This document shows positions 16,171-64,000 of a stretch of DNA of 64,000 nucleotides, in pieces. The DNA lies in IMG/VR virus record IMGVR_UViG_3300032322_002561, positions 1-64,000 of that record, one strand, 5' to 3'. Position numbers and translations under genes: made by a program. How positions within the stretch are numbered: the stretch's first letter is position 1; every line of letters begins with the position of its first letter. The notes under the pieces are model-generated. The model saw only the letters and a program-made list of their open reading frames with translations. It was not told where the DNA came from and made no database searches.

Positions 16171-16178
16171 TATAAATA
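16171..16178 (+). promoter_or_regulatory. T4 late promoter consensus TATAAATA
   Basis: Exact consensus, 5 nt before the gp25 ATG. Confidence 0.8.
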
Positions 16179-36278: not shown

Positions 36279-36290
36279 ATATGGTATAAT
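36274..36290 (+). promoter_or_regulatory. Late promoter TATAAATA (36274-36281) with an adjacent extended -10 TGGTATAAT (36282-36290)
   Basis: Exact T4 late consensus overlapping the stop codon, followed by TGnTATAAT and an AGGA SD before ATG 36308. Confidence 0.7.
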
Positions 36291-36307
36291 AGGAACAGGT
36301 AACTGAC

Positions 36308-38107: not shown

Positions 38108-38119
38108 AAGGAAACTAGA

Positions 38120-39107: not shown

Positions 39108-39136
39108 TTTACTTTTACAGCAGTATCTTGTATAAT
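39108..39136 (+). promoter_or_regulatory. Sigma70-like leaderless promoter (TTTACT-N17-TATAAT-N6-ATG) heading the glycan operon
   Basis: TTTACT 39108-39113, TATAAT 39131-39136, ATG 39143. Confidence 0.65.
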
Positions 39137-39142
39137 CAGAAG

Positions 39143-39448
39143 ATGAATACCAACGACTTGATAAATCACGCCCGTGCTAGATTTGACCATGAAGTGGCAC
39201 GACGTGTGTTAAAGGAAAAGTACGAAGCCAAAATGTTGTTTGCCCATTGTGGTGGAATGTTCCGGGCTGGTCCAGAATTGATCAACATCTTAAATTGTTG
39301 TACTTGTAACAAGGCTGTGATTTTAGATTTATATGAAACTCCGGTGAGTGTGGATGTTCTTGAACTTAAAAAGTTGGCCGAGCAACGCTGGCAAGAACAA
39401 ATGACTGCCTGGCAAATCGAATTTGAGGAAACATCAAAAAAAAGATGA
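39143..39448 (+). CDS. Hypothetical protein (about 101 aa)
   Basis: Start reassigned to ATG 39143; ATGA-coupled to the next gene. Confidence 0.7.
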   Translation: MNTNDLINHARARFDHEVARRVLKEKYEAKMLFAHCGGMFRAGPELINILNCCTCNKAVILDLYETPVSVDVLELKKLAEQRWQEQMTAWQIEFEETSKKR

Positions 39449-40248
39449 CCACGGGTGCATTGATATTTGCCTTCAACAATGAAAAAATTGATTATGTAAG
39501 TTTGGCTGCTTGGAACGCAAAAAACATACAACGCCATCTGGGCATTGGCACAGCAGTTGTTACCGATGCAGACACTGTTCCTGATGCGTTTGAACATGTG
39601 ATCAAAATTGATCCTGATATGACAAACACCGAGTCAAGATATTTTGAAGATATCAAAACTTCGGTAACCTGGCATAATCGCAATCGCATGGACGCATTTG
39701 AGGTGTCGCCATGGCAAAAAACTATTTTGCTAGATGCTGATTATGTGGTGGCCAGCAACAGTCTATTGCCAACACTGGAATGCAAGCAGGATTTTTTGTG
39801 CTACAAGGATGCATATGATGTTTCGCACGTGACTGATTTTAGTGGCCTCAACTCCTTTGGTTCCATGTGTTTGCCCATGTGGTGGGCCACGGTAGTTGTG
39901 TTTGAGAGGTCACGCAAAGCAAAAATGATATTTGACTGTATGAAAATGATTAAACAACATTGGTCACACTATAGAAATCTGTACGGCATACAAAAAAAGA
40001 CCTACCGAAATGACTTTGCCTTGAGCATAGCCCTGGGCATAGTAAGTGGACAAACCTGGCGGGCAGAATCGTTGTCAGGTAGCATGGCCTCAGTCATGCC
40101 TGAACATGAATTAACACAGCTGGATACGGATCACTATCAAATACGGTATCAGAATCGTGATAACCAACCGCGCACAATATCTTGGAAAAACATGGACTTT
40201 CATGCCATGGGCAAAAGCCACCTGGAGGCCATAATTGCGTCCCATTGA
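39445..40248 (+). CDS. GT-A fold glycosyltransferase (GT8-like)
   Basis: SPWQKTILLDADY (DxD), AVVTD, MWWATVVVF. Confidence 0.7.
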   Translation: MTTGALIFAFNNEKIDYVSLAAWNAKNIQRHLGIGTAVVTDADTVPDAFEHVIKIDPDMTNTESRYFEDIKTSVTWHNRNRMDAFEVSPWQKTILLDADYVVASNSLLPTLECKQDFLCYKDAYDVSHVTDFSGLNSFGSMCLPMWWATVVVFERSRKAKMIFDCMKMIKQHWSHYRNLYGIQKKTYRNDFALSIALGIVSGQTWRAESLSGSMASVMPEHELTQLDTDHYQIRYQNRDNQPRTISWKNMDFHAMGKSHLEAIIASH

Positions 40249-40987
40249 AGAACAAGGCTACCTTGTGGTGGCCACACAACATTATGTTCACAACGCTGTA
40301 AAATTGATAGAAAGCTTTAGGCAACAACATGCCACGGCGCGAGTGTGTCTGCTGACTGACCAAGCTCTTGAGCACAAACTTTTTGATCATGTTAGAATCA
40401 TAGACAATCCCAATCTTGAAAATGCCTGGGCCAATGACTGGCAAGTATTTCGAAAATCTCCATTTAGAGAAACCATCAAACTTGAAGCTGACATGTTGAT
40501 AGCATCACCTATTGATCACTGGTGGTCTTTGTTTAGACATCGTGATGTTGTTATCAGCACCGGTTGCCGTAACTGGCACGGTGAACTCAGCACAGCTAGA
40601 CAATATCGTAAAACTTTTGATGCCAATTGTTTGCCTGATGTCTATAATGCCATCACCTACTGGCGTTTGAGTCAAACAGCCAAGGAATTTTTTGATTGTG
40701 TTCGTGACATATTTGAAAACTGGGAACATTATAAAAAGCTGATTAAATTTCCTGAGTCAGTGCCCAGTACCGATTTGGTTTATGCCATGGCGGCGGTAAT
40801 TGTAGGGCAAGACAAAGTTACCATGCCCTTTACAACATACCCACAGGTGGTGCACATGAAGTCGCATCATGCTGGCACACAAGGCAGGGATTGGACCAAA
40901 GAATTGGTATGGGAAATGGATCCATTGCGCATAAACACTGTGGCACAGTGGGGAGCCTTTCACTATCATGTCAAGGATTGGATATGA
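40235..40987 (+). CDS. GT-A fold glycosyltransferase (GT8-like), paralogue of 39445
   Basis: SPFRETIKLEADM (ExD variant), CLLTD, VYNAITYW. Confidence 0.65.
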   Translation: MRPIEEQGYLVVATQHYVHNAVKLIESFRQQHATARVCLLTDQALEHKLFDHVRIIDNPNLENAWANDWQVFRKSPFRETIKLEADMLIASPIDHWWSLFRHRDVVISTGCRNWHGELSTARQYRKTFDANCLPDVYNAITYWRLSQTAKEFFDCVRDIFENWEHYKKLIKFPESVPSTDLVYAMAAVIVGQDKVTMPFTTYPQVVHMKSHHAGTQGRDWTKELVWEMDPLRINTVAQWGAFHYHVKDWI

Positions 40988-41325
40988 ATCTTGAAGAATT
41001 AGTAGATATTTTAACCAACACCCCAAAACCGCAACCGGTATTTTATCGTCTTTATCATGACGACCATGGCAATGCCTTGTTTTACAGTATGCAAGATGTG
41101 CCGGGCAAATATATTGAAATTGATCGCGATACCTATGCAAAAAACAGCATGCGGGTGAGAGTAGTCAATGGAGAATTACAAGAAGTGGCCTGGCGAACGG
41201 TCACTAAACTTGTGCCAAGCACTAGTGGTACCGCCTGTCACAAAACCAATGTGGCCGTGGTAGTTGATACAGATACCAACATAAAATGGAGTATGAAATG
41301 CACAGAGTTGATGTCGCAGACTTAG
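40984..41325 (+). CDS. Hypothetical protein
   Basis: Start reassigned to the ATGA overlap at 40984; FYRLYHDD.G..LFYSM. Confidence 0.6.
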   Translation: MNLEELVDILTNTPKPQPVFYRLYHDDHGNALFYSMQDVPGKYIEIDRDTYAKNSMRVRVVNGELQEVAWRTVTKLVPSTSGTACHKTNVAVVVDTDTNIKWSMKCTELMSQT

Positions 41326-42224
41326 ACTGTATATTTTTAACATATGATGAACCAAATCGCGAGGAAAATTGGGTCAAAATTAAGAACATGGTACCATGGG
41401 CCCAGCGTGTGGATGGTGTTAAAGGGTCTGACGCCGCTCACAAAGCCGCCGGCGAAGCAAGTAGTACCGAGCGTTTTATTCTTATTGATGGCGACAACAT
41501 TCCAGATTCTGCGTTCTTCAATCTCACACTAGAATTCCCCACAGCAGAATACGAGCAGGCAGTGTTTCGTTGGCGTGCAAGAAATCATATCAACGGACTC
41601 ATGTACGGCAACGGTGGTTTGAGTTCGTGGACTCGTACCTTTGTCAAGAATATGCGCACACACGAAGCCACTGACGGGCGCAGTGAAACCGAAGTTGAAT
41701 TTTGTTTTGATCCCCTGTATTGGCCCATGTATAACTGTTATTCAACCACGTATCCCAATGGTTCGGCATTTCAGGCCTGGCGTGCAGGATTTCGTGAAGG
41801 TGTCAAGATGTGCCTGAACAAAGGTGCTCGTCCCACCGTGGACGAATTCCGTGAACGAGTACATCATAGAAATCTTGATCACCTGACCATATGGCACAAC
41901 GTAGGTGCTGATGTTGACTACGGATTATGGGCCATGGCTGGTGCCAGGCAGGGCACTTACATGACCATGTTGACCGGCTGGGATCATCGTGAGGTTCAAG
42001 ATTTTGATAAACTTGCTGAGTTATGGAAAACTGTGGCCAACACTGATCCACGCTTGCTGGCCAATCGCGTGGGGCCTGATCTTGGCGGCGAGTTAGATTT
42101 GCCAATGAGCATGCTAGATGTTGATCAAAGCAAGTTCTTCAAACATCACTATCGAAGTAATTGGCACAATATGTCGGTCATGACTAGAGAAATTGATGTA
42201 ATAAGACAGCAGGAAGGTTGGTAA
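41298..42224 (+). CDS. GT-A fold (GT2-like) glycosyltransferase
   Basis: CIFLTYDEPN...GVKGSDAAH...FILIDGDN (DxD)...INGLMYGNGG; GGAG SD before ATG 41298. Confidence 0.7.
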   Translation: MHRVDVADLDCIFLTYDEPNREENWVKIKNMVPWAQRVDGVKGSDAAHKAAGEASSTERFILIDGDNIPDSAFFNLTLEFPTAEYEQAVFRWRARNHINGLMYGNGGLSSWTRTFVKNMRTHEATDGRSETEVEFCFDPLYWPMYNCYSTTYPNGSAFQAWRAGFREGVKMCLNKGARPTVDEFRERVHHRNLDHLTIWHNVGADVDYGLWAMAGARQGTYMTMLTGWDHREVQDFDKLAELWKTVANTDPRLLANRVGPDLGGELDLPMSMLDVDQSKFFKHHYRSNWHNMSVMTREIDVIRQQEGW

Positions 42225-42233
42225 AACAGTATC

Positions 42234-43178
42234 ATGCCCGAGCAAAATTATCTTGAACTCAAGTTAGAAAATGATTTATTACTGGAAACCTCAGAGTTTG
42301 TGAAGTTTTGTGTGGCTCATCAACAACAACATATTGTGCTACGGGTCAACAACGAAGCTCACTGTTTAACTTATTGTGGCGTGTATGATATTCTTGATCA
42401 GTTTGATTTTGCTTCTGTAACCATAATAACTGCCAATGCCTTGGAACAGCATCCGCAATACAAAATTGAAAAAAAAGTATGGACGCACTGGCTTCAAAAT
42501 ATTAAAACATTTGATTTTAATTATGATTATGCCTGGAATGAACAGAAACTGTTTGGGTGTTTTTATGGTAGACCCAGTGCGCCAAGACTGGGTATTGCCA
42601 CACACTTGGCTCAGCATCATTCCAGCCGATCACTTATACGCACCAAATTTGATTTTGAACGAGAAGAATCTCGAAAACTTTTTGATTTGCAAAGACTGTT
42701 TGCCTGGCAACCAGAAATTATAAATCATTTACATTTGCTGAACAATCAACAATATATTGGTGATCAATACTATGATCGCGGTCACTACGATCAAGCCAAC
42801 ACTCTCAGTCACATGTATAAACATTTTTTGATTGACATTGTAGCGGAACCAGTTTGCGAAGGGCAAAGTTTTTACCCCACTGAAAAAGTTGTACGAGCCA
42901 TGTTGTGTAAGCGGCCATTTATTGTCATGGCATCACAAAATTATTTGGAATACTTGCGTCAAATGGGGTTTCATACATTTTTTGAATTTTGGAATGAAGA
43001 ATACGATGCTTATGATGCCAAGAATCGCTACATGAAAATACTAGATCTGATAGATCATTTGGCCAAAAAAACACATGCTGAAATGGTAGATCTTTATTAT
43101 GCAATGACCTTTCAGCTAGAGCATAATTATAAGTTGATTGTCAGTCAATCTTATACCACAAAAATTTTACCAATATAA
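42234..43178 (+). CDS. GT10-like (GT-B) glycosyltransferase-family protein
   Basis: IDIVAEP...YPTEKVVRAM...RPFIVM...LRQMGFHTF...EEYD. Confidence 0.6.
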   Translation: MPEQNYLELKLENDLLLETSEFVKFCVAHQQQHIVLRVNNEAHCLTYCGVYDILDQFDFASVTIITANALEQHPQYKIEKKVWTHWLQNIKTFDFNYDYAWNEQKLFGCFYGRPSAPRLGIATHLAQHHSSRSLIRTKFDFEREESRKLFDLQRLFAWQPEIINHLHLLNNQQYIGDQYYDRGHYDQANTLSHMYKHFLIDIVAEPVCEGQSFYPTEKVVRAMLCKRPFIVMASQNYLEYLRQMGFHTFFEFWNEEYDAYDAKNRYMKILDLIDHLAKKTHAEMVDLYYAMTFQLEHNYKLIVSQSYTTKILPI

Positions 43179-43179
43179 C

Positions 43180-44208
43180 ATGTCCAAACAAGTATTGATC
43201 ACAGGCGGTGCTGGTTTCATTGCACATCACATGATTGAGCATATCATACAGACCACGACCTGGAACGTGATTTGCCTGGATCGTCTTGATTTCAGCGGAA
43301 ATTTAAATCGTCTGCACGAGATATTAGCAAAATTTTTGCCGCAAGATCAAAGTCGAGTCAAGATTGTGTATCATGATCTCAAAGCTGAAATTAATTCTAT
43401 GATTGCGGCCGATATCGGGCAGGTAGACTATGTGTTGCATCTTGCGGCCAGTAGTCATGTTGATCGTAGCATATCAAGACCCATGGATTTTGTCATGGAC
43501 AACGTGGTTGGTACTGTGAATTTGTTGCAGTGGGCCAGAACACAAAACAATTTAGAAAAATTCATGTATTTCAGCACGGATGAAATTTTTGGTCCTGCAC
43601 CTGCTGGTGTGGCCTACAAAGAACGAGATAGGTACAACTCTACAAATCCTTATTCAGCCAGCAAGGCTGCTGGCGAGGAAATGTGTGTGGCTTTTGAAAA
43701 CACCTATGGCCTACCCATAGTGATCACACATACCATGAATGTGTTTGGTGAGCGGCAACATCCAGAAAAATTTATTCCACTGTGTGTGCGCAAGGTCCTG
43801 GCTGGTGAAACCATCAAGATTCACAGCAACAAGGACCGCACACAAGCTGGTAGCAGACACTACATTCATGCCAAGGATGTGGCTGCAGGTGCCATGTTTA
43901 TTTTAAATGTCAGCCCTGACAATGTAGTTAAAGATTACGGCGGAGCTCGGTGTCCCAAATTTAATTTGGTAGGTGCTGAAGAAATTGATAATCTTGCTCT
44001 GGCTCAATTGGTGGCGCAGTCTGTGGGGAAACCTTTGCATTATGAACTTGTGGATTTTCACAGCAGTCGCCCAGGGCATGATCTTAGATATGCACTCAAC
44101 GGTGATTTCATGGCTTCCCTGGGCTGGAAGCCAACAATCAAACTGTCGGATCGCATTCAGCAAGTGGTAGCATGGACCCTGCAAAATCCGCAATGGATAC
44201 AATCATGA
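43180..44208 (+). CDS. rmlB: dTDP-glucose 4,6-dehydratase
   Basis: ITGGAGFI, HLAASSHVDRS, STDE, YSASK, HPEKFIP, RPGHDLRY; start reassigned to ATG 43180. Confidence 0.92.
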   Translation: MSKQVLITGGAGFIAHHMIEHIIQTTTWNVICLDRLDFSGNLNRLHEILAKFLPQDQSRVKIVYHDLKAEINSMIAADIGQVDYVLHLAASSHVDRSISRPMDFVMDNVVGTVNLLQWARTQNNLEKFMYFSTDEIFGPAPAGVAYKERDRYNSTNPYSASKAAGEEMCVAFENTYGLPIVITHTMNVFGERQHPEKFIPLCVRKVLAGETIKIHSNKDRTQAGSRHYIHAKDVAAGAMFILNVSPDNVVKDYGGARCPKFNLVGAEEIDNLALAQLVAQSVGKPLHYELVDFHSSRPGHDLRYALNGDFMASLGWKPTIKLSDRIQQVVAWTLQNPQWIQS

Positions 44209-45056
44209 CCAAGCCTGTGTTACCTTTTGTGGAAATCATGGCCACACAGGCCTGCAATATCAGTTGTACAGGTTGTACAAATTACAGTGATCTCAATCAC
44301 AAAGGATGGTTGTCCTGGGAACAAGCTCGAGCACAAATTACGCCATGGCTACAACGAGTCGACATTCCTGATTTTGGTATTCTTGGTGGAGAACCTTTGT
44401 TGAATCCTGAAATACGCGACTGGATCCGTGGCATAAGAGAACTCATGCCCAAGGCACAGATAAGATTTACCACAAATGGGTTATTGTTAGACAAGAATCT
44501 TGATATCGTTGATTTAGCAGCAGAAGTGGGAAACATTGTTTTTAAAATTGGAGTACACACAGACAGTTTAGCCATTGAACAAACAATTGATTATATTTTA
44601 AATAGATTTGATTGGCAACCAGTGACCGAGTTTGGTATCAATCGGTTACTCACTAAAAACAAATTTAGATTTCAAATAAATCGGCCAACTACTTTTTGGA
44701 AAAGTTTTCGAGGTGACTATACAAACATGCAACCTCACAACAGTAATCCAGCCGAGGCTTTTTCAATTTGTTGCCAGAAGACTTGTCCATTACTATATCA
44801 AGGAAAAATATACAAATGCAGCACCAGTGGTTTACTGTTAGATGTGTTAGAAAAATTTGGGCACCAAGACAACACCGAGTGGCTTCCGTTTATTAGCCAA
44901 GGATTACAGCCAGATTGCACAGATCAACAATTACAAGAATTTTTGAATAATTTTGGACGTCCACACAAGATCTGTGGCCAATGTCCAACACAAAAAGATC
45001 TGGGCAGTAAAATAGTGCATCTACAAAACGTGCATACCAAAAAAATCAAATCATGA
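44205..45056 (+). CDS. Radical SAM protein with C-terminal Cys cluster
   Basis: CNISCTGC, LGGEPLL, TTNG, C..TC.LLYQGKIYKC...ICGQC. Confidence 0.88.
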   Translation: MTKPVLPFVEIMATQACNISCTGCTNYSDLNHKGWLSWEQARAQITPWLQRVDIPDFGILGGEPLLNPEIRDWIRGIRELMPKAQIRFTTNGLLLDKNLDIVDLAAEVGNIVFKIGVHTDSLAIEQTIDYILNRFDWQPVTEFGINRLLTKNKFRFQINRPTTFWKSFRGDYTNMQPHNSNPAEAFSICCQKTCPLLYQGKIYKCSTSGLLLDVLEKFGHQDNTEWLPFISQGLQPDCTDQQLQEFLNNFGRPHKICGQCPTQKDLGSKIVHLQNVHTKKIKS

Positions 45057-54699: not shown

Positions 54700-54797
54700 A
54701 ATGGATTCGTAATCTCATCGAACGTATACGTCTTGAAATACGCTATAGAAAAAAACTAAAAGAACTACGCAAACGCGATCCGTTCATTTATAAATGA
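54696..54797 (+). CDS. Small basic 33-aa protein ending DPFIYK (not in ORF track)
   Basis: MKWIRNLIERIRLEIRYRKKLKELRKRDPFIYK*; ATGA overlaps at both ends. Confidence 0.65.
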   Translation: MKWIRNLIERIRLEIRYRKKLKELRKRDPFIYK

Positions 54798-54952
54798 TCA
54801 CTCCTTGTGTAAACATCTGTATCATGACCAATGGCGTGTGCGAAGGGTGTGGTCGCACCATTGATGAAATTGCAGAGTGGACCTTGTATACCGATCAAGA
54901 GCGGCTGACAATCATGCAAAGACTAGGACATGAGCAACATACTGGGAATTAG
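54794..54952 (+). CDS. DUF1289-like small Fe-S protein (not in ORF track)
   Basis: MITPCVNICIMTNGVCEGCGRTIDEIAEW...ER: the PC...C...C.GC.RT.DEI..W pattern. Confidence 0.85.
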   Translation: MITPCVNICIMTNGVCEGCGRTIDEIAEWTLYTDQERLTIMQRLGHEQHTGN

Positions 54953-58589: not shown

Positions 58590-59667
58590 ACATTCCTAAA
58601 AGTTCGGTCCAAAGCCGTTGACTAAATCCACCGTTGTAAAAATGATCAAAGTTATGCTCTACCACGGGCAAGCATCTGCGGTGTATTTCTTGACGCTCTT
58701 GCTGGCTCAAATTGTCAAGGTCTTTAAGTAATTTTACAATCTTTTCCATGCGCAGTCTATCATCGATTTCTTCATCATAGCTTTCATCAAATATGTCACC
58801 AAAGGTTTGGAATCCATATTCACGCATGTATGCCAAACTGCCTGCTGGTGCTACCAACACAAAAGGCATTTCTAGAGCAATGGCCTTGAAAGTTTTTTCT
58901 GTGATATGCAAACGGCGTCCAAAATATACAGTTTCTGTGGCCACGTATATCAAACTGTCAGCAGACTCTTCAAAATTGGTAAGCCAACAGCTGGCCATGT
59001 GTTGTGTGTCCTCGCCGCTGAACAATCTTGGCAATGTGGCTGCGGCAAACACTTGCTCAATGTCGGGATATATGTTATTATACTTAGAAGCAACTTGTGC
59101 TATATCAATGTTTTCGTACACACATGTTCTTGGAGCACTGATATGATTGTGCGCTAGATCATGTTTGAACACGTTATAAAGAAACAATACTCTATGATCA
59201 CGCTTGCCACCTACTATGCGATTGGGACTGATAAAAGTACGACTGGGTCGACGATTGCGAGCTCGAGCGATCAGAAAGGTTTTATCGTATCCACGGAACC
59301 AGTCCTGACTGGCCCAGCCGTGGAAAAAGTAGTAATGTGGAGTCCAGCCATACTGTTTGCACATAGCATCCACAAATTCTCCGCGTTCACTGACCACAAT
59401 GTGTCCAGGTGGTGTGTTTGGATATAAAATATCTCGATTACGTCTTTTTACATCTTGAAACAGGGGTTCGTGTAGATCCAGCCACACTGGTTCTTGATCA
59501 TGCATGTAAACATAGTCGGTTTCTATGATGTCATCCCTACCAAGATTAAATAAATGATCCTTGTCAGTGTGCCCAAACGGGTCACAAAAAAACAATCTTG
59601 TGCCTGGTCTGTGTTGTGCAAACCAAGGCCAAAATGTATGGTTGTAAATTTCATCAATTCTAATCAT
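58570..59667 (-). CDS. GT10-like glycosyltransferase-family protein
   Basis: KRDHR; IYVATET...HITEKTFKAI...MPFVLV...MREYGFQTF...DESYD. Confidence 0.6.
   Translation of the reverse strand: MIRIDEIYNHTFWPWFAQHRPGTRLFFCDPFGHTDKDHLFNLGRDDIIETDYVYMHDQEPVWLDLHEPLFQDVKRRNRDILYPNTPPGHIVVSERGEFVDAMCKQYGWTPHYYFFHGWASQDWFRGYDKTFLIARARNRRPSRTFISPNRIVGGKRDHRVLFLYNVFKHDLAHNHISAPRTCVYENIDIAQVASKYNNIYPDIEQVFAAATLPRLFSGEDTQHMASCWLTNFEESADSLIYVATETVYFGRRLHITEKTFKAIALEMPFVLVAPAGSLAYMREYGFQTFGDIFDESYDEEIDDRLRMEKIVKLLKDLDNLSQQERQEIHRRCLPVVEHNFDHFYNGGFSQRLWTELLGMFDEFRI
59546..59552 (+). promoter_or_regulatory. Possible internal late promoter TTAAATA for the 998-aa gene
   Basis: 113 nt upstream of ATG 59666, inside the antisense gene. 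Confidence 0.3.
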
Positions 59668-62662
59668 GTTTGACGTATTTTATATTGGGACTAAACCAAA
59701 TTTGTTTGCGCATGAGAAACCGTGTCGTGATATCACGCATGCACAGGAATTAAGTGGCACACGTTTTTGTTGGGTAGTGGATTATTTAACCGACTACACA
59801 GGCTTTGATTTTTTATGGGAACCCCCGCCCTGGCAGGCAGATTTTACACATGTTTGGCCCAGTCAGTGGGATCAGTACCATGCGGCATATTTGATTCCAA
59901 AACATGCCACAAGTCTTGATTATCACGCACACACCCAAACTCTTTGGCCCAAAAAGTTTCTAGACAATTATCAAACATTGGTGCCTTGTCAGTTTGATTA
60001 TTCATGGGTGCCACACCCGTGGGAACCACCATACATTTATGTGTTTGGTAATCAACACTATGCCAGCACCATCATGCCCACGGTGGAATATTATACACCA
60101 GGTGCCACAGAACGAAAGTTTGTTGATGACATAGCGGCTAGACTGTTGCCCTGTCGTGATAATTGGGAAATTCTTGAACCCATAGACCAAGAATCCTGGG
60201 ACTGGTCTTGGAGACCCGATCCAGGAGAACCTGCCTATATCTATGTGTTTGGCAATCAATGGAATCCGCCTGAATTCAAAGCCAGCGTGCGTTATGTTGT
60301 GCCCGGTGCCACACAAGTCAAATACATGGATCAGCGTACACGTCGACTACCACAGCCCGAACTGTTCCGTCACAATTTGCCTGTAGCAAAATTTGACTAC
60401 TCATGGGAACCCAATCCGTTTGATCCGCCCATGACCTATGTGTTTGGAAATCAATGGAATCCAGCAGTGCTAGAGCCCACGATAGTTTACAGCACTGGCG
60501 GCACAGAAATCAAGTATGTGGATGACATTGTGGCCACGATAGCCCAGGAAATGACATCATGGACTCTGTTAGACGATATAGAAACATTTGATTACAGTTG
60601 GAGACCCAATCCCACAGATCCGCCTTATATCTATGTGTTTGGAAATCAGTGGCTGACTCCTGAGCAACGTCCGGCTTTGCGTTATGCTGTGCCTGGAGCC
60701 ACTGAAATCAAATACATGCACGAACCTCGTGCTAGACGTGTAGGCAATCCTGAACTGTTTGTGCAATTGTATCCTTGTAACTTTGACTGGTCATGGGAAC
60801 CTGACCCTGGAAGCCCGCCTTATATCTACGTGTTCGGCAATCAATACTACCCCGCTGAAGTCATGCCCACAGTAGAATATCATGCGCCAGGTGCCACCGA
60901 GCGGAAATACATGGACGTGCCCGCACAGCTATTGCCGGATGACACATCGGCCTGGAAACTGTTGCATACCTGTGAATGGGACAAAACCTGGCGTCCAGAA
61001 CCAGGAAGTCCGGCCTACATTTATGTGTTTGGTAATCAGTGGTGGCCAGCAGAAAAAATGCCCACAGTAGAATATCACATGCAGGGTGCCACGGAACGCA
61101 AGTACATGACAGCGCCTGTGGCTCAACTACCTGTAGACATGACACAGTGGCATGTGCCCGAGGGCGTAGACGTGCGTGACATGGATTTTTCTTGGGTGCC
61201 CGATCCTGGTGAACCGCCTTACATATATCAGTTCGCTACACAACATCAAAAAACTGGTGGACCACAATACCGTGTGCCAGGCGCTGTTGAAGTCAAATAC
61301 TTGGATATGATGCGTGCCACAGTCACTAAAGAAGCTGTGCCCATATTTGAAATTGATCACTTGGATGGCAATGCCGGGCAGATTCCCAATACGGTGCGCC
61401 GCGTGCGTTACTTTGACAACTATCGAGACACCTTGATTCGCTTGGCTAAAAACCTCAAAGGCGAATACGAACATATATGGGTGTGCAGTAGCGTTTGTGA
61501 TTACACAGACTTTGACTTTAGTTGGCATCCAGAAATCTGGCAAAGCACCATGTTACATGTGTTTGCGTCAGACGGGGAAAAGTTTGGTGACACATTTTAC
61601 ATGCATGTGCCTACCTTTGCTGAACGTGCTGAGAAAAAAGAGTTGTTAGAATGGTACAGTGTAAACTATGTGTCACGTCGGAACGTGCCACGCAGGCCCT
61701 TGCCGATGATACAACACAATCATGACACACATGTCGAAGCAGTCAAAACCATGACATGGTCTGGGCCTTTGGCAGTGTTTGCCACAGAACCTGTAGAGCG
61801 AATTCCTCCTGTGCCACTATGGCGAGAAAAGACTAAAACGGTTGTGCCACTGAGTAAGGGTGCTAGTCAAGTCATAGTGCCCAAGGTGGCAGTGCCCTAT
61901 ATCAAAACTCAGTTGTATGATTATCCCTACATAGACAAGACACAACGACATCTTTGCAAAGAACAACCCTTGGACATAGTCTTCATTGACAACGGCGAAC
62001 CCAATGCTGAATCTAATTATCAGCACCTGGTGGAAGTGGCCAGCCTGACTTGGCGCAATCGTATACACCGCAGTACAGGAGTCACAGGCCGTGTGGCCGC
62101 ATATCATGCCGCAGCTGAACTAAGTAGCACACCTTGGTTTTTTGCTGTGTTTGCCAAGTTGCGTGTTGATAAAGATTTTGATTGGTTATGGCAACCAGAC
62201 CGTATGCAGGAACCCAAGCACTATATCTTCCATGCGTTTAATCCTGTGAATGGCTTGGAGTATGGGCACCAGGCCATGATTGCCTACAACAAACGATTGG
62301 TCCTGGCCAACCCAGGCACAGGACTTGACTTTACCTTGGATTCAGCACACGAAGTAGTGCCTATACTATCAGGTACGGCCCACTATACAGATTCGGCTTG
62401 GATGGCCTGGCGCACTGCGTTCCGCGAAGTAATCAAACTGCGTCACAGTTTGCCCAATGTAGAAAACGAATACAGATTAAACAAGTGGCTACAAGAAAAC
62501 AACGACAATGATCGTGCGATGTACAGTCATTTGGGTGCGCAGGATGCTGTGGAGTATTACGAATCTGTTAAAGGGGATGAAACAGAACTACGCAAGAGCT
62601 ATGACTGGGCCTGGTTGGCCAGTTATGCTTTGATCAAACGCAATCTAACAGCGAGTCAATAA
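59666..62662 (+). CDS. 998-aa protein: tandem about 65-aa W/Y/P-rich repeats plus a C-terminal GT-A-like domain lacking DxD
   Basis: Seven FDxSWxPxPxxPxYIYVFGNQ repeats; C-terminus aligns by eye to the 41298 GT (IVFIDNGEPNAE..., NPVNGLEYGH..., AWRTAFREVIKL). Confidence 0.85.
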   Translation: MFDVFYIGTKPNLFAHEKPCRDITHAQELSGTRFCWVVDYLTDYTGFDFLWEPPPWQADFTHVWPSQWDQYHAAYLIPKHATSLDYHAHTQTLWPKKFLDNYQTLVPCQFDYSWVPHPWEPPYIYVFGNQHYASTIMPTVEYYTPGATERKFVDDIAARLLPCRDNWEILEPIDQESWDWSWRPDPGEPAYIYVFGNQWNPPEFKASVRYVVPGATQVKYMDQRTRRLPQPELFRHNLPVAKFDYSWEPNPFDPPMTYVFGNQWNPAVLEPTIVYSTGGTEIKYVDDIVATIAQEMTSWTLLDDIETFDYSWRPNPTDPPYIYVFGNQWLTPEQRPALRYAVPGATEIKYMHEPRARRVGNPELFVQLYPCNFDWSWEPDPGSPPYIYVFGNQYYPAEVMPTVEYHAPGATERKYMDVPAQLLPDDTSAWKLLHTCEWDKTWRPEPGSPAYIYVFGNQWWPAEKMPTVEYHMQGATERKYMTAPVAQLPVDMTQWHVPEGVDVRDMDFSWVPDPGEPPYIYQFATQHQKTGGPQYRVPGAVEVKYLDMMRATVTKEAVPIFEIDHLDGNAGQIPNTVRRVRYFDNYRDTLIRLAKNLKGEYEHIWVCSSVCDYTDFDFSWHPEIWQSTMLHVFASDGEKFGDTFYMHVPTFAERAEKKELLEWYSVNYVSRRNVPRRPLPMIQHNHDTHVEAVKTMTWSGPLAVFATEPVERIPPVPLWREKTKTVVPLSKGASQVIVPKVAVPYIKTQLYDYPYIDKTQRHLCKEQPLDIVFIDNGEPNAESNYQHLVEVASLTWRNRIHRSTGVTGRVAAYHAAAELSSTPWFFAVFAKLRVDKDFDWLWQPDRMQEPKHYIFHAFNPVNGLEYGHQAMIAYNKRLVLANPGTGLDFTLDSAHEVVPILSGTAHYTDSAWMAWRTAFREVIKLRHSLPNVENEYRLNKWLQENNDNDRAMYSHLGAQDAVEYYESVKGDETELRKSYDWAWLASYALIKRNLTASQ
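59783..59789 (-). promoter_or_regulatory. Possible internal late promoter (G)TTAAATA for the minus-strand cassette
   Basis: 115 nt upstream of ATG 59667; same octamer as at 8975. Confidence 0.3.
59993..61320 (+). repeat. Seven tandem about 195-nt coding repeats
   Basis: Recurrent TATGTGTTTGG(T/C/A)AATCA; GCCCACAGTAGAATATCA occurs in two units. Confidence 0.9.
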
Positions 62663-63710
62663 CATACTCAACTTCTAGATCTGTCAGTTCAGGATAGATA
62701 GGCAAACACAGGGTTCTGCGACTCAAGGCCGACGCAACACTGAGTACATCGGGTCCTGGAAATTCATCGTAAGCTGGTAGCTCATGCAAGGGTTCCCAAG
62801 ACAAAATCTTGGTTTCAATTCTGCGTATTTCAAGATTGCGTTGTAGGATATCACGCTTGTCTACATCAATCACAAACTTGTTGACAGCATGAGTTCTATG
62901 ATTGGTCTCGTCTATGAGACTGCGTGCTCGAGTACCACGCAAGCGTTCCAGCCAATACCCTGCAATTTTACTACGTCTGCGTTGCCAGTCATCTAAGTAC
63001 CGGGTTTTGACCATGAGTTGGGCACAGTCAACTTCACTCATTCTTGAATTGGTGCCAATCATTTGATGATTTGGTTTACCATTGTTGCGCCAACTTCGTG
63101 CAAAATCCAACATATTAATATCATCAGTAACTATGGCACCACCGTTGCCGTAACTGTTGAAATTTTTCATAGGGTCAAAACTTATGGCTGTTACATTGCC
63201 CACACGTCTACATGCATCACTGAGCCAGTGCTGAGCACCATCTTCAATTATGATAGCATTGTTGTTCAAGTATTCGTGTTTGTTGATGCTTTGCCCATAC
63301 AAGCCCACGGCCACTGTGGCCTGTACACTTTGTTCACGATCAATTTTCTTATGATCCATTTGACCGTAGGCATCGGTATCTACTATGGTCACAGTCCAGC
63401 CAGCACGTTGAAAGGCATTTATAGTGGCCACATAAGTCATGGCCGGTATCAACACACGCGGTGGCCTAGGCATGTAACCTTGAGTGGCATAATATTCGGC
63501 AATGATTTCCAAGGCTTGTGTGCCCGAATGACAGGTTACAGCATATTTGGTACCGTTCTTTTTGGCTAGCCAATTTTCTAATTCGGCTGTGTAGTTGCCG
63601 TCCATGAGTCGACCACTGCGTAAAACTTCATCAGTGGCATCTAGTATTTCTGTTCTGAGATTGTTATACTGTTTTTTGATTCCAGTAAACGGAATTTGCA
63701 AGCCATTCAT
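62634..63710 (-). CDS. DegT/DnrJ/EryC1/StrS-family PLP-dependent sugar aminotransferase
   Basis: SGTQAL, PAMTYVAT, IEDGAQ, SFDPMKNFNSYGNGG (catalytic Lys), GTNSRMSE, LCLPIYP; start reassigned to ATG 63710. Confidence 0.93.
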   Translation of the reverse strand: MNGLQIPFTGIKKQYNNLRTEILDATDEVLRSGRLMDGNYTAELENWLAKKNGTKYAVTCHSGTQALEIIAEYYATQGYMPRPPRVLIPAMTYVATINAFQRAGWTVTIVDTDAYGQMDHKKIDREQSVQATVAVGLYGQSINKHEYLNNNAIIIEDGAQHWLSDACRRVGNVTAISFDPMKNFNSYGNGGAIVTDDINMLDFARSWRNNGKPNHQMIGTNSRMSEVDCAQLMVKTRYLDDWQRRRSKIAGYWLERLRGTRARSLIDETNHRTHAVNKFVIDVDKRDILQRNLEIRRIETKILSWEPLHELPAYDEFPGPDVLSVASALSRRTLCLPIYPELTDLEVEYVIDSLLDCV

Positions 63711-64000
63711 GATATATTTGAAATCCTTGTTCGACATCTACCTGTGGATCATATCCAAAATCTCGCTGTGCTGCTTCTATATTTAACGCACCGCGGCTGG
63801 GGAAATCCGCATCTTTGTCGTGAATTTCAATGCGCCCGCGACCTATCAACTCAACTATTTTTTGTGCGGCTTGTAAAAGTGTAACACTGTGACTCTTGGT
63901 GATGTTGTATGTTTTGTTTACTGCGTTTAAACTCAGTGCGGCACCCATTATGCCACGAGCGGCATCATCTACATAGGTAAAGTCCAAGGTTTCAGAAGCA
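63664..64000 (-). CDS. NAD-dependent NDP-sugar epimerase/dehydratase, C-terminal part (5' end outside window)
   Basis: ETLDFTYVDDAARG...YNI...RGALNI..A...FGY.P.V.VEQG. Confidence 0.85.
   Translation of the reverse strand, partial: ASETLDFTYVDDAARGIMGAALSLNAVNKTYNITKSHSVTLLQAAQKIVELIGRGRIEIHDKDADFPSRGALNIEAAQRDFGYDPQVDVEQGFQIYHEWLANSVYWNQKTV

What the first reader, a model, noticed from the sequence alone, without database searches (positions are those of the whole stretch)
39143..64000. Phage-encoded glycan build-and-tailor system resembling an aminoglycoside pathway, directly after the tail-fibre genes
Seen: about 25 kb holding RmlB, a DegT aminotransferase, an NDP-sugar epimerase, an amidinotransferase, an O-carbamoyltransferase, 3 GT-A enzymes plus a pseudo-GT, 5 GT10-like proteins and 6 radical SAMs. 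A further radical SAM, a B12 radical SAM and an SDR lie at 372-3498. Established: RmlB plus a DegT-type enzyme yields 4-amino-4,6-dideoxyhexoses (VioA/WecE chemistry; mimiviruses use this logic for fibre glycans). StrB1-type amidinotransferases, TobZ carbamoyltransferase, BtrN-type radical SAM dehydrogenases and GenK-type B12 methylases are aminoglycoside tailoring chemistries. Inference: the phage makes an unusual amino/guanidino/carbamoyl-decorated oligosaccharide for its virion or fibres, for the host surface (superinfection exclusion), or for its DNA. Phage carbamoyltransferases are also known to modify 5-hydroxymethylcytosine. I know of no described phage pathway with this full combination.
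Basis: partly seen in the sequence, partly recalled or inferred. Interest (0 to 1): 0.9.

Follow-up and report, generated by a model that had tools for sequence, protein, structure and literature searches.

The report
Jumbo-phage sugar-building and sugar-tailoring gene cluster
A widespread group of uncultured giant phages carries, always directly behind its baseplate and fibre genes, a ~25-kb block of soluble enzymes that looks built to assemble and heavily decorate an unusual sugar chain, most likely on the virus particle itself, though neither product nor target has been seen.

Summary
Window 39.4-64 kb, running on to about 64.65 kb of the parent 236-kb IMG/VR contig, encodes:
- an RmlB-type 4,6-dehydratase, a DegT aminotransferase and a GalE-like SDR;
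- an amidinotransferase and a NovN/TobZ-type O-carbamoyltransferase;
- six radical SAM enzymes, five of them paralogues of NCBIfam N_Twi_rSAM;
- five paralogues of a large unannotated family whose model has a GT-B fold;
- two GT8-like proteins, one GT2-like protein, and a 998-aa protein with 7 beta-rich repeats ahead of GT-A-like domains;
- one conserved orphan protein.

The gene order giant structural protein, three fibre-like genes, then the GT and radical SAM genes is kept in 80 of 80 related phage loci. The downstream core is kept in about 70 of 80.

No gene product has a membrane segment, so a lipid-carrier surface-polysaccharide route is unlikely.

Best reading (about 0.45): late cytoplasmic glycosylation of virion baseplate or fibre proteins with an amino, guanidino and carbamoyl-decorated glycan. 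Rivals are a soluble aminoglycoside-like metabolite, DNA or nucleotide modification, and host-surface remodelling.

"GT10", "BtrN-type" and "GenK-type" are analogies, not memberships, and no aminocyclitol enzymes were found. The chemistry of the radical SAM family is unknown. I rate this a new variant of a known kind, of high interest.

The parts
35673..39088 (+). Three conserved structural or fibre-like genes that immediately precede the cluster: 35673-36278, 36308-38107 and 38120-39088. They are candidate glycan acceptors.
   Evidence: 36308 matches PHROG 'virion structural protein' families and 35673 matches phrog_11259. 38120 is 28% Ser+Thr and 24% Gly+Ala with almost no Cys. They are present upstream of the GT genes in 78-80 of 80 loci. 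An exact TATAAATA lies at 36274.
39128..39448 (+). Small conserved ORF of 106 aa, Cys-rich, function unknown.
   Evidence: Present in 80 of 80 D1-anchored loci. No family hit.
39445..40248 (+). C1, a GT8-like GT-A candidate with an LLDADY motif.
   Evidence: Paralogue of 40235. The family profile A8 hits glycogenin-1 at E = 0.002 with the DxD aligned. Present in 80 of 80 loci. A homologue lies next to the structural genes in RsoM2USA.
40235..40987 (+). C2, a paralogue of C1 with an EAD variant of the motif.
   Evidence: (phrog_1903).
40891..41325 (+). Small ORF of 144 aa, unknown function, present in 48 of 80 relatives.
   Evidence: The only hit is a sub-threshold Fe-ADH match.
41286..42224 (+). 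D1, a GT2-like GT-A glycosyltransferase candidate with TYDEPN and IDGDN motifs.
   Evidence: Homologous to residues 760-962 of the 998-aa protein, whose model matches GT-A glycosyltransferases. Present in 80 of 80 loci. 40% identical to RsoM2USA ORF350.
42234..43178 (+). B1, a member of the unannotated GT-B-like family. It lies in the variable slot.
43138..44208 (+). NDP-hexose 4,6-dehydratase (RmlB-like). It lies in the variable slot.
   Evidence: GGAGFIA, STDEIFG, YSASK. Seen in only 8 of 80 D1-anchored loci.
44172..45056 (+). Small radical SAM of 294 aa with a C-terminal Cys-rich tail. It lies in the variable slot.
   Evidence: Pfam Radical_SAM 9.5e-13. Sequence. Seen in 3 of 80 loci.
45053..46102 (+). 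B2, a GT-B-like family member. It lies in the variable slot.
45963..47489 (+). T1, a radical SAM with an N-terminal twitch domain.
   Evidence: NF033640 8e-96, above cut-off. The CX3CX2C motif and N-terminal Cys are conserved.
47473..48585 (+). B3, a GT-B-like family member that belongs to the core.
48578..53672 (+). T2 to T5, four tandem radical SAMs with N-terminal twitch domains (48578-49918, 49902-51161, 51158-52378, 52359-53672).
   Evidence: NF033640 scores of 8e-91, 2e-117, 1.5e-99 and 4e-83, all above the cut-off of 170 bits. Each has its own orthologue at 64-84% identity in relatives.
53593..54699 (+). U368, a conserved orphan protein. The true start is probably near 53644, giving about 351 aa.
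   Evidence: No Pfam, NCBIfam, PHROG or PDB match. More than 6000 database clusters, all 'hypothetical'. Conserved His, Glu and Asp columns.
54930..56384 (+). O-carbamoyltransferase of the NodU/CmcH family, like NovN, GdmN and TobZ.
56381..57406 (-). Amidinotransferase, the most conserved gene of the core at about 84% identity.
57393..59667 (-). B4 (57393-58589) and B5 (58570-59667), GT-B-like family members.
   Evidence: The B5 model has pLDDT 87, and all top PDB matches are GT-B glycosyltransferases. Family invariants are R159, E245, T256-E257-K258 and N339.
59666..62662 (+). 998-aa protein. Seven beta-rich repeats of about 65 aa (residues about 110-560) precede two GT-A-like domains. The last domain lacks the DxD found at the aligned position in D1.
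   Evidence: Repeat number is 0-7 among orthologues.
62634..63737 (-). DegT/DnrJ/EryC1-type PLP aminotransferase.
63664..64000 (-). 3' part of a GalE-like SDR (epimerase or reductase type). The gene runs to contig position 64650, beyond the window.
372..3498 (-). Distant accessory genes: a radical SAM/SPASM (372-1472), a 172-aa ORF (1463-1981) and a class-B radical SAM (1981-3498).
   Evidence: In one related contig a homologue of the class-B enzyme sits between T1 and T2 (L088). Membership of the system is not shown here.
5883..6413 (-). Bs, a stand-alone copy of the C-terminal domain of the B family (176 aa).

Best explanation
This is a late-expressed, wholly cytoplasmic glycosylation system. 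It builds a heavily tailored oligosaccharide on proteins of the phage particle, most likely the giant 5065-aa baseplate or fibre protein and/or the Ser/Thr-rich fibre-like proteins encoded just upstream.

Proposed steps:
1. Host NDP-hexose is converted to a 4-keto-6-deoxy intermediate by the RmlB-type dehydratase where it is present, or otherwise by host supply.
2. The DegT enzyme transaminates it to an amino-deoxy sugar. The GalE-like SDR adjusts its configuration.
3. The amidinotransferase converts an amine to a guanidine.
4. The carbamoyltransferase caps a hydroxyl.
5. Five distinct radical SAM enzymes with N-terminal twitch domains carry out further radical edits on the sugar nucleotides or on sugars already attached. 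Candidates are oxidation, epimerisation, deoxygenation and C-C chemistry.
6. Five or six GT-B-like and three or four GT-A-like transferases assemble the chain on the soluble acceptor. The repeat-bearing 998-aa protein may act as a transferase or scaffold that docks on a repetitive target.

Shown: the enzyme families and their catalytic motifs, GT folds for two of the families, the absence of membrane components, and the invariant linkage to the structural genes.

Inferred: the order of steps, the substrates, the acceptor and the timing.
For: 1. The enzyme inventory is confirmed with catalytic motifs.
2. The B5 model has a GT-B fold and the 998-aa protein and D1 domain have a GT-A fold. The C family gives a weak match to the self-glucosylating GT8 glycogenin with the DxD aligned.
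3. No predicted membrane segment occurs in any of the 22 cluster proteins, and no Pfam match suggests a Wzx, Wzy, ABC-transporter or lipid-carrier-priming enzyme. The acceptor is therefore soluble.
4. The order giant protein, 35673, 36308, 38120, 39128, C1, C2, D1, T1, B3, T2 and onward, all on one strand, holds in 80 of 80 loci. The core from T1 to DegT holds in about 70 of 80 loci at 40-86% identity.
5. The same outline occurs in RsoM2USA at only 30-40% identity: giant ORF361, then an SDR, C, C, D1, T and a D1-like gene. A marine contig (L116) shows fibre-gene homologues followed by C, C, D1, T, T.
6. Gene overlaps are tight. An exact T4-type late-promoter octamer lies at 36274, just upstream of 36308, and the phage encodes a gp55-like late sigma factor.
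7. The adjacent protein 38120 is 28% Ser+Thr.
8. Precedent exists. Virions of the jumbo phage XacN1 contain at least two glycoproteins (PMC5852040). The GT-A domains resemble the mycobacteriophage Che8 glycosyltransferase.
9. Relatives of the T family sit in sugar contexts in bacteria. In Poseidonocella they lie with FdtA, an NDP-hexose 2,3-dehydratase and an EryCIII-like GT. In a Bdellovibrionales genome they lie with a GT2, a UDP-glucose dehydrogenase and a PMT_2 protein.
Against: - No glycan, glycoprotein or transcript has been observed for this phage. The linkage to structural genes is guilt by association.
- In RsoM2USA the carbamoyltransferase and one T gene lie about 95 kb from the structural module. 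The tailoring core can therefore be separated from the virion genes.
- Some bacterial T arrays have no sugar genes nearby. One is a stand-alone T2-T4-T5-T2 set beside an integrase and a type IV secretion system. Another has 11 or more T genes with an amidinotransferase and an Asp/Arg hydroxylase. The T enzymes may therefore act on something other than sugars.
- The count of the late-promoter octamer is not above chance (2 against 1.4 expected).
- RsoM2USA virion proteomics did not report glycoproteins.
- XacN1 showed no detectable C or D1 homologues in my searches.
Confidence: 0.45

Rival explanations
1. The cluster makes a soluble aminoglycoside-like or pseudo-oligosaccharide metabolite in the infected cell. 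The product would carry guanidino and carbamoyl groups and would be released at lysis or act inside the cell. It could inhibit competitors or host functions, or act as a signal.
For: - Amidinotransferase, O-carbamoyltransferase, DegT and radical SAM enzymes are typical of secondary-metabolite tailoring. The closest solved relatives are NovN, GdmN and TobZ, and StrB1, SxtG and AGAT.
- T homologues occur inside a PKS and deoxysugar gene cluster in Poseidonocella.
- All proteins are soluble.
- Iyer et al. proposed a metabolite role for cyanophage carbamoyltransferase clusters (PMC7824862). The S-SCSM2R authors labelled a DegT-like, radical SAM and amidinotransferase trio 'antibiotic synthesis genes' (PMC12801897).
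- T, AmidT and CarbT co-occur in Bdellovibrionota without GTs.
Against: - No aminocyclitol-forming enzyme (2-deoxy-scyllo-inosose synthase or inositol-phosphate synthase type), no exporter and no self-resistance gene was detected.
- Nine or ten glycosyltransferase-like proteins are many for a small molecule.
- The cluster is embedded in the structural-gene block in 80 of 80 relatives.
- The repeat number of the 998-aa protein varies, which fits a macromolecular partner better.
Confidence: 0.2
2. The cluster hypermodifies phage DNA or its nucleotide precursors. Sugars would be added to a modified base and then carbamoylated or amidinated, protecting the genome from host nucleases.
For: - Phage carbamoyltransferases can convert 5hmC to 5-carbamoyloxymethylcytosine (PMC8670742).
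- The phage DNA glucosyltransferases are GT-B proteins of similar size (my own knowledge).
- ThyX lies two genes beyond the cluster end.
- Twitch-domain radical SAMs include enzymes that act on nucleotides, and T proteins give weak core matches to MoaA and viperin models.
- Some bacterial T arrays lie in mobile islands beside defence-type genes.
Against: - No ThyA-type hydroxymethylase, base-exchange enzyme, kinase or dNTP-processing gene of the known hypermodification pathways lies in the 76 kb examined. DNA-active carbamoyltransferases co-occur with ThyA-type genes, whereas those next to glycosyltransferases were on unmodified contigs (PMC8670742).
- The cluster is co-oriented with late structural genes, whereas DNA modification is needed during replication.
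- An RmlB, DegT and SDR set points to NDP-amino-sugar chemistry.
- The remaining 160 kb of the contig was not examined.
Confidence: 0.15
3. The cluster remodels the host cell surface (LPS, capsule or S-layer glycan) during infection, blocking superinfection or altering adsorption.
For: - This is the usual interpretation of NDP-sugar and GT clusters in cyanophages and other large phages (PMC7824862).
- In S-SCSM2R the amidinotransferase homologue lies among KdsA, KdsB and GT genes.
Against: - No membrane-spanning protein is present, and no Pfam match suggests a flippase, polymerase, ligase, ABC exporter or lipid-carrier transferase.
- The set is strictly conserved and orthologous across the clade. 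Surface-antigen loci are usually sporadic and polymorphic.
- Host machinery could in principle take over export, so this reading is not excluded.
Confidence: 0.08
4. The radical SAM array is a protein- or peptide-maturation system (RiPP-like or structural-protein cross-linking or hydroxylation), and the sugar genes are a separate neighbouring function.
For: - SPASM and twitch radical SAMs are best known as peptide maturases, and weak matches to such families appear.
- One Bdellovibrionota array includes an Asp/Arg hydroxylase and no sugar genes.
- A stand-alone four-gene array exists.
Against: - T and B (GT-B-like) genes are physically interleaved and co-conserved (T1-B3-T2, with extra B genes between T4 and T5 in relatives).
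- No RiPP recognition element, leader-peptide-like small ORF, protease or exporter was found.
- Other bacterial contexts are sugar-related.
Confidence: 0.08

Closest known systems
Phage- and giant-virus-encoded virion glycosylation: mycobacteriophage capsid and tail glycosylation, chlorovirus PBCV-1 Vp54, mimivirus fibril glycans made with viosamine and bacillosamine pathways, and XacN1 virion glycoproteins
   Same: - Virus-encoded soluble glycosyltransferases and NDP-amino-sugar enzymes lie next to structural genes.
- The GT-A domains resemble the Che8 glycosyltransferase.
- Glycoproteins were detected in virions of the jumbo phage XacN1 (PMC5852040).
   Different: - Those systems have one to a few GTs and conventional sugar enzymes.
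- None is known to me to combine five or six radical SAMs, an amidinotransferase, a carbamoyltransferase and an unannotated GT-B family.
- No glycoprotein has been shown for this clade.
Aminoglycoside and deoxysugar tailoring pathways: StrB1 amidinotransfer, TobZ/NovN carbamoylation, DesI/DesII, BtrN, GenK
   Same: The same enzyme superfamilies are present: DegT aminotransferase, 4,6-dehydratase, amidinotransferase, NodU/CmcH carbamoyltransferase, twitch-type and class-B radical SAMs.
   Different: - No aminocyclitol-forming enzyme is present.
- The radical SAMs carry the auxiliary-cluster domain at the N-terminus and belong to the uncharacterised family NF033640, not to the BtrN or DesII families.
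- All specific equivalog cut-offs are missed.
- The setting is a phage late structural operon.
The interchangeable 'five radical SAM plus glycine amidinotransferase' module of Campylobacter phages CP220 and CPt10 (PMC2853527), and the DegT-like, radical SAM and amidinotransferase genes of cyanophage S-SCSM2R (PMC12801897)
   Same: - Large T4-like phages carry a block with about five radical SAM genes and an amidinotransferase of unexplained function.
- The S-SCSM2R amidinotransferase is a detectable homologue at 28% identity and sits among GT genes.
   Different: - The CP220 and CPt10 radical SAMs are not detectable relatives of the T family by tblastn.
- Those modules lack the B-family GTs and the carbamoyltransferase, and are not reported next to fibre genes.
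Cyanophage carbamoyltransferase-containing sugar and amino-acid modification clusters (Iyer et al. 2021, PMC7824862)
   Same: - A jumbo-phage cluster centred on NodU/CmcH carbamoyltransferases, predicted to decorate a polysaccharide or make a metabolite.
- Cyanophage carbamoyltransferases are 28-30% identical to this one.
   Different: Those clusters carry halogenases, 2OG oxygenases, HAD phosphatases and methylases. They lack radical SAM arrays, an amidinotransferase and the B-family GTs.
5hmC carbamoyltransferase DNA modification (MetaGPA study, PMC8670742)
   Same: The same carbamoyltransferase family, also found in phages.
   Different: The DNA-modifying enzymes co-occur with ThyA-type hydroxymethylases and deaminases. 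Here the neighbours are GTs and sugar enzymes, which that study found on unmodified contigs.

Membership tests
dTDP-glucose 4,6-dehydratase (RmlB, extended SDR); ORF 43138-44208 | NAD-binding GxxGxxG, catalytic YxxxK, and the Thr-Asp-Glu dehydratase motif | tested here: met
   GGAGFIA, YSASK and STDEIFG are present. Pfam Epimerase/GDP_Man_Dehyd scores 1e-49.
dTDP-glucose 4,6-dehydratase (RmlB, extended SDR); ORF 43138-44208 | Score above the curated equivalog cut-off (TIGR01181, 365 bits), which would imply dTDP-glucose specificity | tested here: not met
   243.8 bits. The nucleotide specificity is therefore open.
DegT/DnrJ/EryC1 sugar aminotransferase; ORF 62634-63737 | Full-length Pfam match above cut-off, and the PLP-binding lysine | tested here: met
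   PF01041 6e-55 over positions 3-359 of 360. SFDPMKN is present. All equivalog models (PseC, WecE, DesI, ArnB) fall below cut-off, so regiochemistry is unknown.
Amidinotransferase (AGAT, StrB1, SxtG); ORF 56381-57406 | Sequence relationship to solved members, and the Cys-His-Asp catalytic triad | tested here: inconclusive
   E-values run from 9e-14 to 1e-9 against AGAT, StrB1, SxtG and HsvA. The catalytic Cys and His are aligned, but the Asp region is not covered by the alignment. There is no Pfam or NCBIfam hit.
NodU/CmcH O-carbamoyltransferase (TobZ, NovN); ORF 54930-56384 | Both the Carbam_trans_N and Carbam_trans_C domains above cut-off | tested here: met
   3e-36 and 1.6e-47. NovN 4e-47 and TobZ 2e-31. 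The acceptor is not testable with these tools.
N_Twi_rSAM (NF033640); T1-T5 | Full-length score above the curated cut-off (170 bits), the CX3CX2C motif, and N-terminal auxiliary-cluster cysteines | tested here: met
   280-393 bits for all five. Invariant cysteines are C9, C27, C74 and C77, plus C123, C127 and C130.
BtrN-type radical SAM dehydrogenase | Radical SAM core followed by a C-terminal twitch domain, with similarity to BtrN | tested here: not met
   In T1-T5 the SPASM/twitch match is N-terminal to the core. No BtrN match appeared in the PDB search.
GenK-type cobalamin radical SAM methyltransferase; ORF 1981-3498 | An N-terminal B12-binding domain plus a radical SAM core | tested here: inconclusive
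   It hits many class-B radical SAM NCBIfam models (3.7e-21 to 1e-6), all far below cut-off. Pfam B12-binding was not detected.
GT10 alpha-1,3-fucosyltransferase; B1-B5 | A match to the GT10 family model, or to FucT structures | tested here: not met
   There is no Pfam hit even at E = 10 and no PDB sequence or profile hit. No fucosyltransferase is among the top 50 fold matches. The invariant R...E...TEK pattern resembles the GT10 donor-binding motif as I recall it. That is a lead, not a test.
GT-B fold glycosyltransferase superfamily; B family | Two Rossmann-like domains, with top structural neighbours that are GT-B enzymes | tested here: met
   The B5 model has pLDDT 87 and pTM 0.86. All 18 matches at E <= 1e-3 are GT-B or GT-B-like proteins (OtsA, SdgB, BshA and others). 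TM-scores are only about 0.39. Only one member was modelled.
GT-A fold glycosyltransferases; D1 and the 998-aa protein | GT-A fold and a DxD motif | tested here: met
   Fold matches include K4CP, WrtF, ArnC, GtrB, RmlT and SunS at 2e-4 to 1e-2, and viral GT-A proteins. D1 has IDGDN. The aligned position in the C-terminal domain of the 998-aa protein reads VFAKL, with no DxD, so that domain may be non-catalytic.
GT8 (glycogenin-like) GT-A; C1 and C2 | Profile similarity with the DxD aligned | tested here: inconclusive
   Profile A8 against glycogenin-1 gives E = 0.002 over 110 residues, with DAD aligned.
Lipid-carrier surface polysaccharide pathway (Wzx/Wzy- or ABC-dependent) | A membrane phosphoglycosyltransferase, flippase or transporter, polymerase, or ligase | tested here: not met
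   No hydrophobic 19-residue segment (mean Kyte-Doolittle >= 1.6) occurs in any cluster protein, and no such Pfam family was found.
Aminoglycoside biosynthetic gene cluster | An aminocyclitol-forming enzyme (2-deoxy-scyllo-inosose synthase or inositol-phosphate synthase type) | tested here: not met
   None was detected. The only related signal is a 36-residue, sub-threshold Fe-ADH match in the 144-aa ORF 40891.
Phage 5hmC-based DNA hypermodification | A ThyA-type pyrimidine hydroxymethylase with the modifying enzymes | tested here: inconclusive
   None lies in the window or in the next 12 kb; only ThyX was found. About 160 kb of the contig was not examined.

The most novel reading that the evidence does not exclude
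The five orthologous radical SAMs with N-terminal twitch domains are a new class of sugar-editing enzymes. Together with an amidinotransferase and a carbamoyltransferase they let a virus make cationic guanidino- and carbamoyl-sugars. These could be displayed on its giant baseplate fibres as a new kind of receptor-binding or shielding glycan. Even more novel, they could be released as a phage-made aminoglycoside-like compound. The same radical SAM toolkit is amplified to 8-11 copies in predatory Bdellovibrionota.
Probability: 0.25. Interest if true: 0.9.

Novelty: new variant of a known kind. Interest (0 to 1): 0.74.

Why it matters
If the product decorates the virion, this would be the most elaborate virus-encoded protein-glycosylation system in a bacteriophage. 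It would extend the "viruses make their own glycans" principle from giant eukaryotic viruses and mycobacteriophages to an abundant environmental phage clade.

Three large protein families would gain a testable biochemical context:
- the N_Twi radical SAMs;
- the B family, with about 14,650 representatives at 50% identity;
- the U368 orphan, with more than 6000 clusters.

Guanidino- and carbamoyl-sugars made by radical chemistry would be new glycobiology and a possible source of enzymes for aminoglycoside-type diversification.

The work also links older unexplained observations of phage genomes unusually rich in radical SAM genes, some with an amidinotransferase beside them. Examples are Campylobacter phages CP220 and CPt10, the cyanophage S-SCSM2R, and a T4-like marine genome with 12 radical SAM genes.

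Tried and rejected
Dead ends:
- A megablast of the 25-kb region against 50,697 phage records found nothing.
- The B5 protein had no tblastn match in cultured phages.
- Pfam, PHROG, NCBIfam and PDB sequence or profile searches for the B family, U368, D1 and the 998-aa protein were empty or sub-threshold. A Pfam scan of 30 distant B-family members was also empty.
- The profile-profile comparison of the C family against the D family was negative. The two GT-A-like families are therefore not detectably related to each other.
- The five-paralogue alignment was too divergent for the genome scan. A three-paralogue alignment worked.
- Sigma-70 promoter and terminator scans were at chance level. TATAAATA with one mismatch was also at chance.
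- There are no tRNAs in the window and no DNA-level tandem repeat in the 998-aa gene.
- Pfam found nothing in the 5065-aa protein.

Readings I rejected:
- Stop-codon read-through or a mis-called fusion as the cause of the 'SPASM before radical SAM' order. The N-terminal arrangement is a defined NCBIfam family, matched end to end.
- CP220-type radical SAMs as members of the T family.
- Host assignment from MAG labels. Haliscomenobacter, Legionellales, Flavobacterium and Porticoccaceae contigs carry near-identical phage clusters, which most likely reflects binning of phage contigs.

Full report
**Source and setting**

The window is the first 64 kb of IMG/VR contig IMGVR_UViG_3300032322_002561, which is 236,309 bp long. 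It is a myovirus-type jumbo phage.
- Pfam and PHROGs identify a gp5/VgrG-like baseplate hub (13524-15023), a gp25-like protein (16184-16558), a gp6-like baseplate wedge (16609-20304, PHROG E = 1.7e-275) and virion structural proteins (9001, 10533, 36308).
- They also identify a gp55-like late sigma factor (7983-8891) and SbcC- and Mre11-like genes.
- A single ORF of 5065 codons (20304-35501) follows the wedge gene. It has no Pfam match. Parts of it resemble ORF361 of Ralstonia jumbo phage RsoM2USA.

**Checking the inventory**

The listed enzymes are there.

- ORF 43138-44208 is an NDP-hexose 4,6-dehydratase. Pfam scores 1e-49 and TIGR01181 2e-72, below the equivalog cut-off. The GGAGFIA, STDEIFG and YSASK motifs are present.
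- ORF 62634-63737 (-) is a full-length DegT/DnrJ/EryC1 aminotransferase with the PLP lysine.
- The partial ORF at the window end continues to contig position 64650. It is an SDR with SSSMVYG and YGIMK, which is the epimerase or reductase type rather than a dehydratase.
- ORF 56381-57406 (-) matches solved amidinotransferases: AGAT at 9e-14, StrB1 at 1.7e-10, and SxtG and HsvA. The catalytic Cys and His are aligned.
- ORF 54930-56384 has both carbamoyltransferase domains. Its best matches are NovN, GdmN and TobZ.

There are six radical SAM genes in the stated interval. Five of them (T1-T5, at 45963, 48578, 49902, 51158 and 52359) are paralogues.
- Pfam places a SPASM-type Cys-rich domain before the radical SAM core in T3-T5, which looked odd.
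- NCBIfam resolves this. All five are end-to-end members of NF033640, 'twitch domain-containing radical SAM protein', at 280-393 bits against a cut-off of 170.
- The N-terminal cysteines and the CX3CX2C motif are invariant.
- No member of this family has a known reaction as far as I could find.

**The GT-like ORFs**

None of them has a Pfam hit.

*B family.* An all-against-all BLAST defines the family as 42234, 45053, 47473, 57393(-) and 58570(-), plus a stand-alone C-terminal domain at 5883-6413(-).
- A profile of 24 members finds 14,653 representatives at E <= 1e-3 among 1.84 billion cluster representatives. Many are tandem duplications.
- Thirty sampled members have no Pfam domain.
- The AlphaFold model of B5 is confident (pLDDT 87, pTM 0.86).
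- Its PDB neighbours are all GT-B glycosyltransferases or close relatives: OtsA, SdgB, BshA, SenB and VldE, at E from 5e-5 upward. TM-scores are about 0.39, as expected when the two domains are hinged differently.
- No fucosyltransferase appears among them. 'GT-B-like' is therefore supported and 'GT10' is not.
- The invariant R...E...TEK pattern recalls the GT10 donor site. I note that only as a lead from memory.

*D1 and the 998-aa protein.* D1 (41286-42224) is homologous to residues 760-962 of the 998-aa protein.
- The model of the large protein (pLDDT 84) matches GT-A enzymes. The K4CP chondroitin polymerase aligns over about 520-580 columns, which suggests two GT-A domains. Other matches are WrtF, ArnC, GtrB, RmlT and the peptide S-glycosyltransferases SunS and ThuS.
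- It also matches viral GT-A proteins, including the mycobacteriophage Che8 glycosyltransferase.
- D1 has a DxD motif (IDGDN).

*C family.* The profile for 39445 and 40235 gives a modest hit to glycogenin (GT8, E = 0.002) with the DxD aligned.

**A repeat protein**

Residues about 110-560 of the 998-aa protein are seven copies of a 65-residue unit, FDYSWxPxPxxPPYIYVFGNQ...PTVEYxxPGATExKYMD.
- Mean pairwise identity is 41%, and the units are predicted to be beta-rich.
- Orthologues carry 0-7 copies.
- The repeats resemble a hairpin that also occurs inside the GT-A-like domains.
- Their role is unknown. A docking module for a repetitive partner is a reasonable guess.

**An orphan**

ORF 53593-54699 (U368) lies between T5 and the carbamoyltransferase in all relatives.
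- It has no match in Pfam, NCBIfam, PHROGs or the PDB, either as a single sequence or as a profile.
- It has more than 6000 database clusters, all unnamed.
- Conserved His, Glu and Asp columns suggest a metal site. This is not tested.

**Conservation**

Anchoring on the carbamoyltransferase gave 296 IMG/VR hits. In the 80 loci fetched, the following block recurs in about 70 loci at 40-86% identity, on contigs up to 364 kb:
- T1-B3-T2-T3-T4-T5-U368-CarbT on one strand;
- AmidT-B4-B5 on the opposite strand;
- the 998-aa protein;
- DegT and the SDR on the opposite strand.

Anchoring on D1 gave 245 hits. In 80 of 80 loci the order is giant protein, 35673, 36308, 38120, 39128, C1, C2, (40891), D1, a variable slot, then T1-B3-T2 and onward.

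RmlB, the small radical SAM, B1 and B2 occupy the variable slot and are absent from most relatives. The 'RmlB plus DegT' logic is therefore not universal in the clade, whereas DegT plus the SDR is.

The T4 orthologue alone has more than 7900 database clusters, so the clade is abundant. Among 50,697 sequenced phage records, only RsoM2USA, Vibrio phages K566 and K567 and a marine single-cell virus have T-family genes.

In RsoM2USA the order is giant ORF361, then an SDR, C, C, D1, T and a D1-like gene, at 30-40% identity. Its carbamoyltransferase and a T2 orthologue lie about 95 kb away.

**What constrains the target**

1. None of the cluster proteins has a hydrophobic segment of transmembrane type, and no lipid-carrier or export enzyme is present. 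The product is therefore made on a soluble acceptor.
2. The cluster is co-oriented with, and tightly packed behind, the baseplate and fibre genes. The only two exact T4-type late-promoter octamers in the window sit just upstream of gp25 (16171) and of 36308 (36274). The count is not above chance, so this is a hint only.
3. The neighbouring 38120 protein is 28% Ser+Thr. The structural proteins are nearly Cys-free, unlike the enzymes.
4. No ThyA-type hydroxymethylase or other known DNA-hypermodification gene lies in the 76 kb seen. ThyX, an FkbM-type methyltransferase, another class-B radical SAM and a class-I methyltransferase follow the cluster. In the MetaGPA study, DNA-active carbamoyltransferases pair with ThyA-type genes, while those beside glycosyltransferases were on unmodified contigs.

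**Bacterial relatives of the T family**

They are concentrated in Bdellovibrionota and often form tandem arrays of up to 8-11 paralogues. Contexts vary.
- A Poseidonocella locus has two B12 radical SAMs, FdtA, an NDP-hexose 2,3-dehydratase, an EryCIII-like GT and a PKS.
- A Bdellovibrionales array lies next to AsnB, a GT2, a UDP-glucose dehydrogenase and a PMT_2 protein.
- Another array has an amidinotransferase and an Asp/Arg hydroxylase but no sugar genes.
- A stand-alone T2-T4-T5-T2 set at 45-50% identity to the phage genes lies beside an integrase and a type IV secretion system.

Sugar or sugar-nucleotide substrates are therefore the best guess for the T enzymes, but this is not secure.

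**Literature**

- Campylobacter phages CP220 and CPt10 carry an interchangeable module with five radical SAM genes and a glycine amidinotransferase, unexplained since 2010 (PMC2853527).
- Cyanophage S-SCSM2R has a DegT-like, radical SAM and amidinotransferase trio labelled 'antibiotic synthesis genes' (PMC12801897). Its second amidinotransferase is a 28% homologue of the one here and lies among GT and Kds genes.
- A T4-like marine genome with 12 radical SAM genes has been noted (PMC5332604).
- Iyer et al. described cyanophage carbamoyltransferase clusters, interpreted as capsule decoration or a metabolite (PMC7824862).
- XacN1 virions contain at least two glycoproteins (PMC5852040).
- I found no paper describing this combination.

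**Verdict**

The cluster is a real, coherent, strongly conserved sugar-building and sugar-tailoring system of an abundant jumbo-phage clade.

My probabilities for the target are:
- virion proteins, about 0.45;
- a soluble metabolite, about 0.2;
- DNA or nucleotides, about 0.15;
- the host surface, about 0.08;
- a separate protein-maturation role for the radical SAM array, about 0.08.

The aminoglycoside resemblance is one of shared enzyme superfamilies only. The system is a new variant of virus-encoded glycosylation with several unannotated families. Its chemistry, above all that of the five radical SAMs, is open.

Noticed in passing
window 20304-35501 (+): A single ORF of 5065 codons directly after the gp6-like baseplate wedge gene. 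It has no Pfam domain, and parts of it resemble RsoM2USA ORF361. It is conserved upstream of the cluster in 77 of 80 relatives and is a candidate giant baseplate or fibre protein.
   Followed up: partly
window 59666-62662 (+), residues about 110-560: Seven tandem beta-rich protein repeats of about 65 aa (FDYSWxPxPxxPPYIYVFGNQ...). Copy number ranges from 0 to 7 among orthologues. No DNA-level tandem repeat is detectable.
   Followed up: partly
window 58570-59667 (-) and 59666-62662 (+): Two divergently transcribed genes whose start codons overlap by 2 bp, leaving no intergenic promoter space. Both convergent junctions also overlap: the carbamoyltransferase and amidinotransferase genes by 4 bp (56381-56384), and the 998-aa gene and DegT by 29 bp (62634-62662).
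   Followed up: no
window 5883-6413 (-): A 176-aa ORF that is only the C-terminal, donor-binding-like domain of the B family. It lies among recombination genes, far from the cluster.
   Followed up: no
window 4087-5850 (-), 6957-7970 (-), 7983-8891 (-): SbcC/Rad50-like ATPase, an Mre11-like phosphoesterase and a gp55-like late sigma factor. These are T4-like replication, recombination and late-transcription features.
   Followed up: no
window 16171-16178 and 36274-36281 (+): The only two exact TATAAATA octamers in 64 kb. Each lies within 35 bp upstream of a structural gene start (gp25-like and 36308). The count is not above chance.
   Followed up: partly
L104/L166, L141/L167, L129, L101 (Bdellovibrionota genomes): Tandem arrays of 7-11 paralogous N_Twi radical SAM genes, sometimes with an amidinotransferase or a carbamoyltransferase. 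Some members are 45-50% identical to phage T1, T2 or T5. Their function in these predatory bacteria is unknown.
   Followed up: partly
L086, L087 (Haliscomenobacter MAG), L088 (Legionellales MAG), L111/L116 (Gammaproteobacteria MED685): Contigs of 40-180 kb filed in bacterial MAGs carry the phage cluster at up to 73% identity, and L116 also has fibre-gene homologues. They are probably phage contigs binned with bacteria, and are unreliable as host evidence.
   Followed up: partly
L084 1-10650 (contig 65.5-76.2 kb, beyond the window): The cluster is followed by ThyX, an FkbM-type methyltransferase, a DUF2201/VWA metallopeptidase-like protein with a MoxR AAA ATPase, a 666-aa class-B radical SAM and a class-I methyltransferase. 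Some of these may belong to the system.
   Followed up: partly
L002 (Vibrio phage K566, VPHK566_0302-0311 and 0322): A cultured 255-kb Vibrio phage has five distant T-family radical SAM genes interleaved with unannotated proteins of 310-420 aa. This layout is reminiscent of the T/B interleaving here.
   Followed up: no
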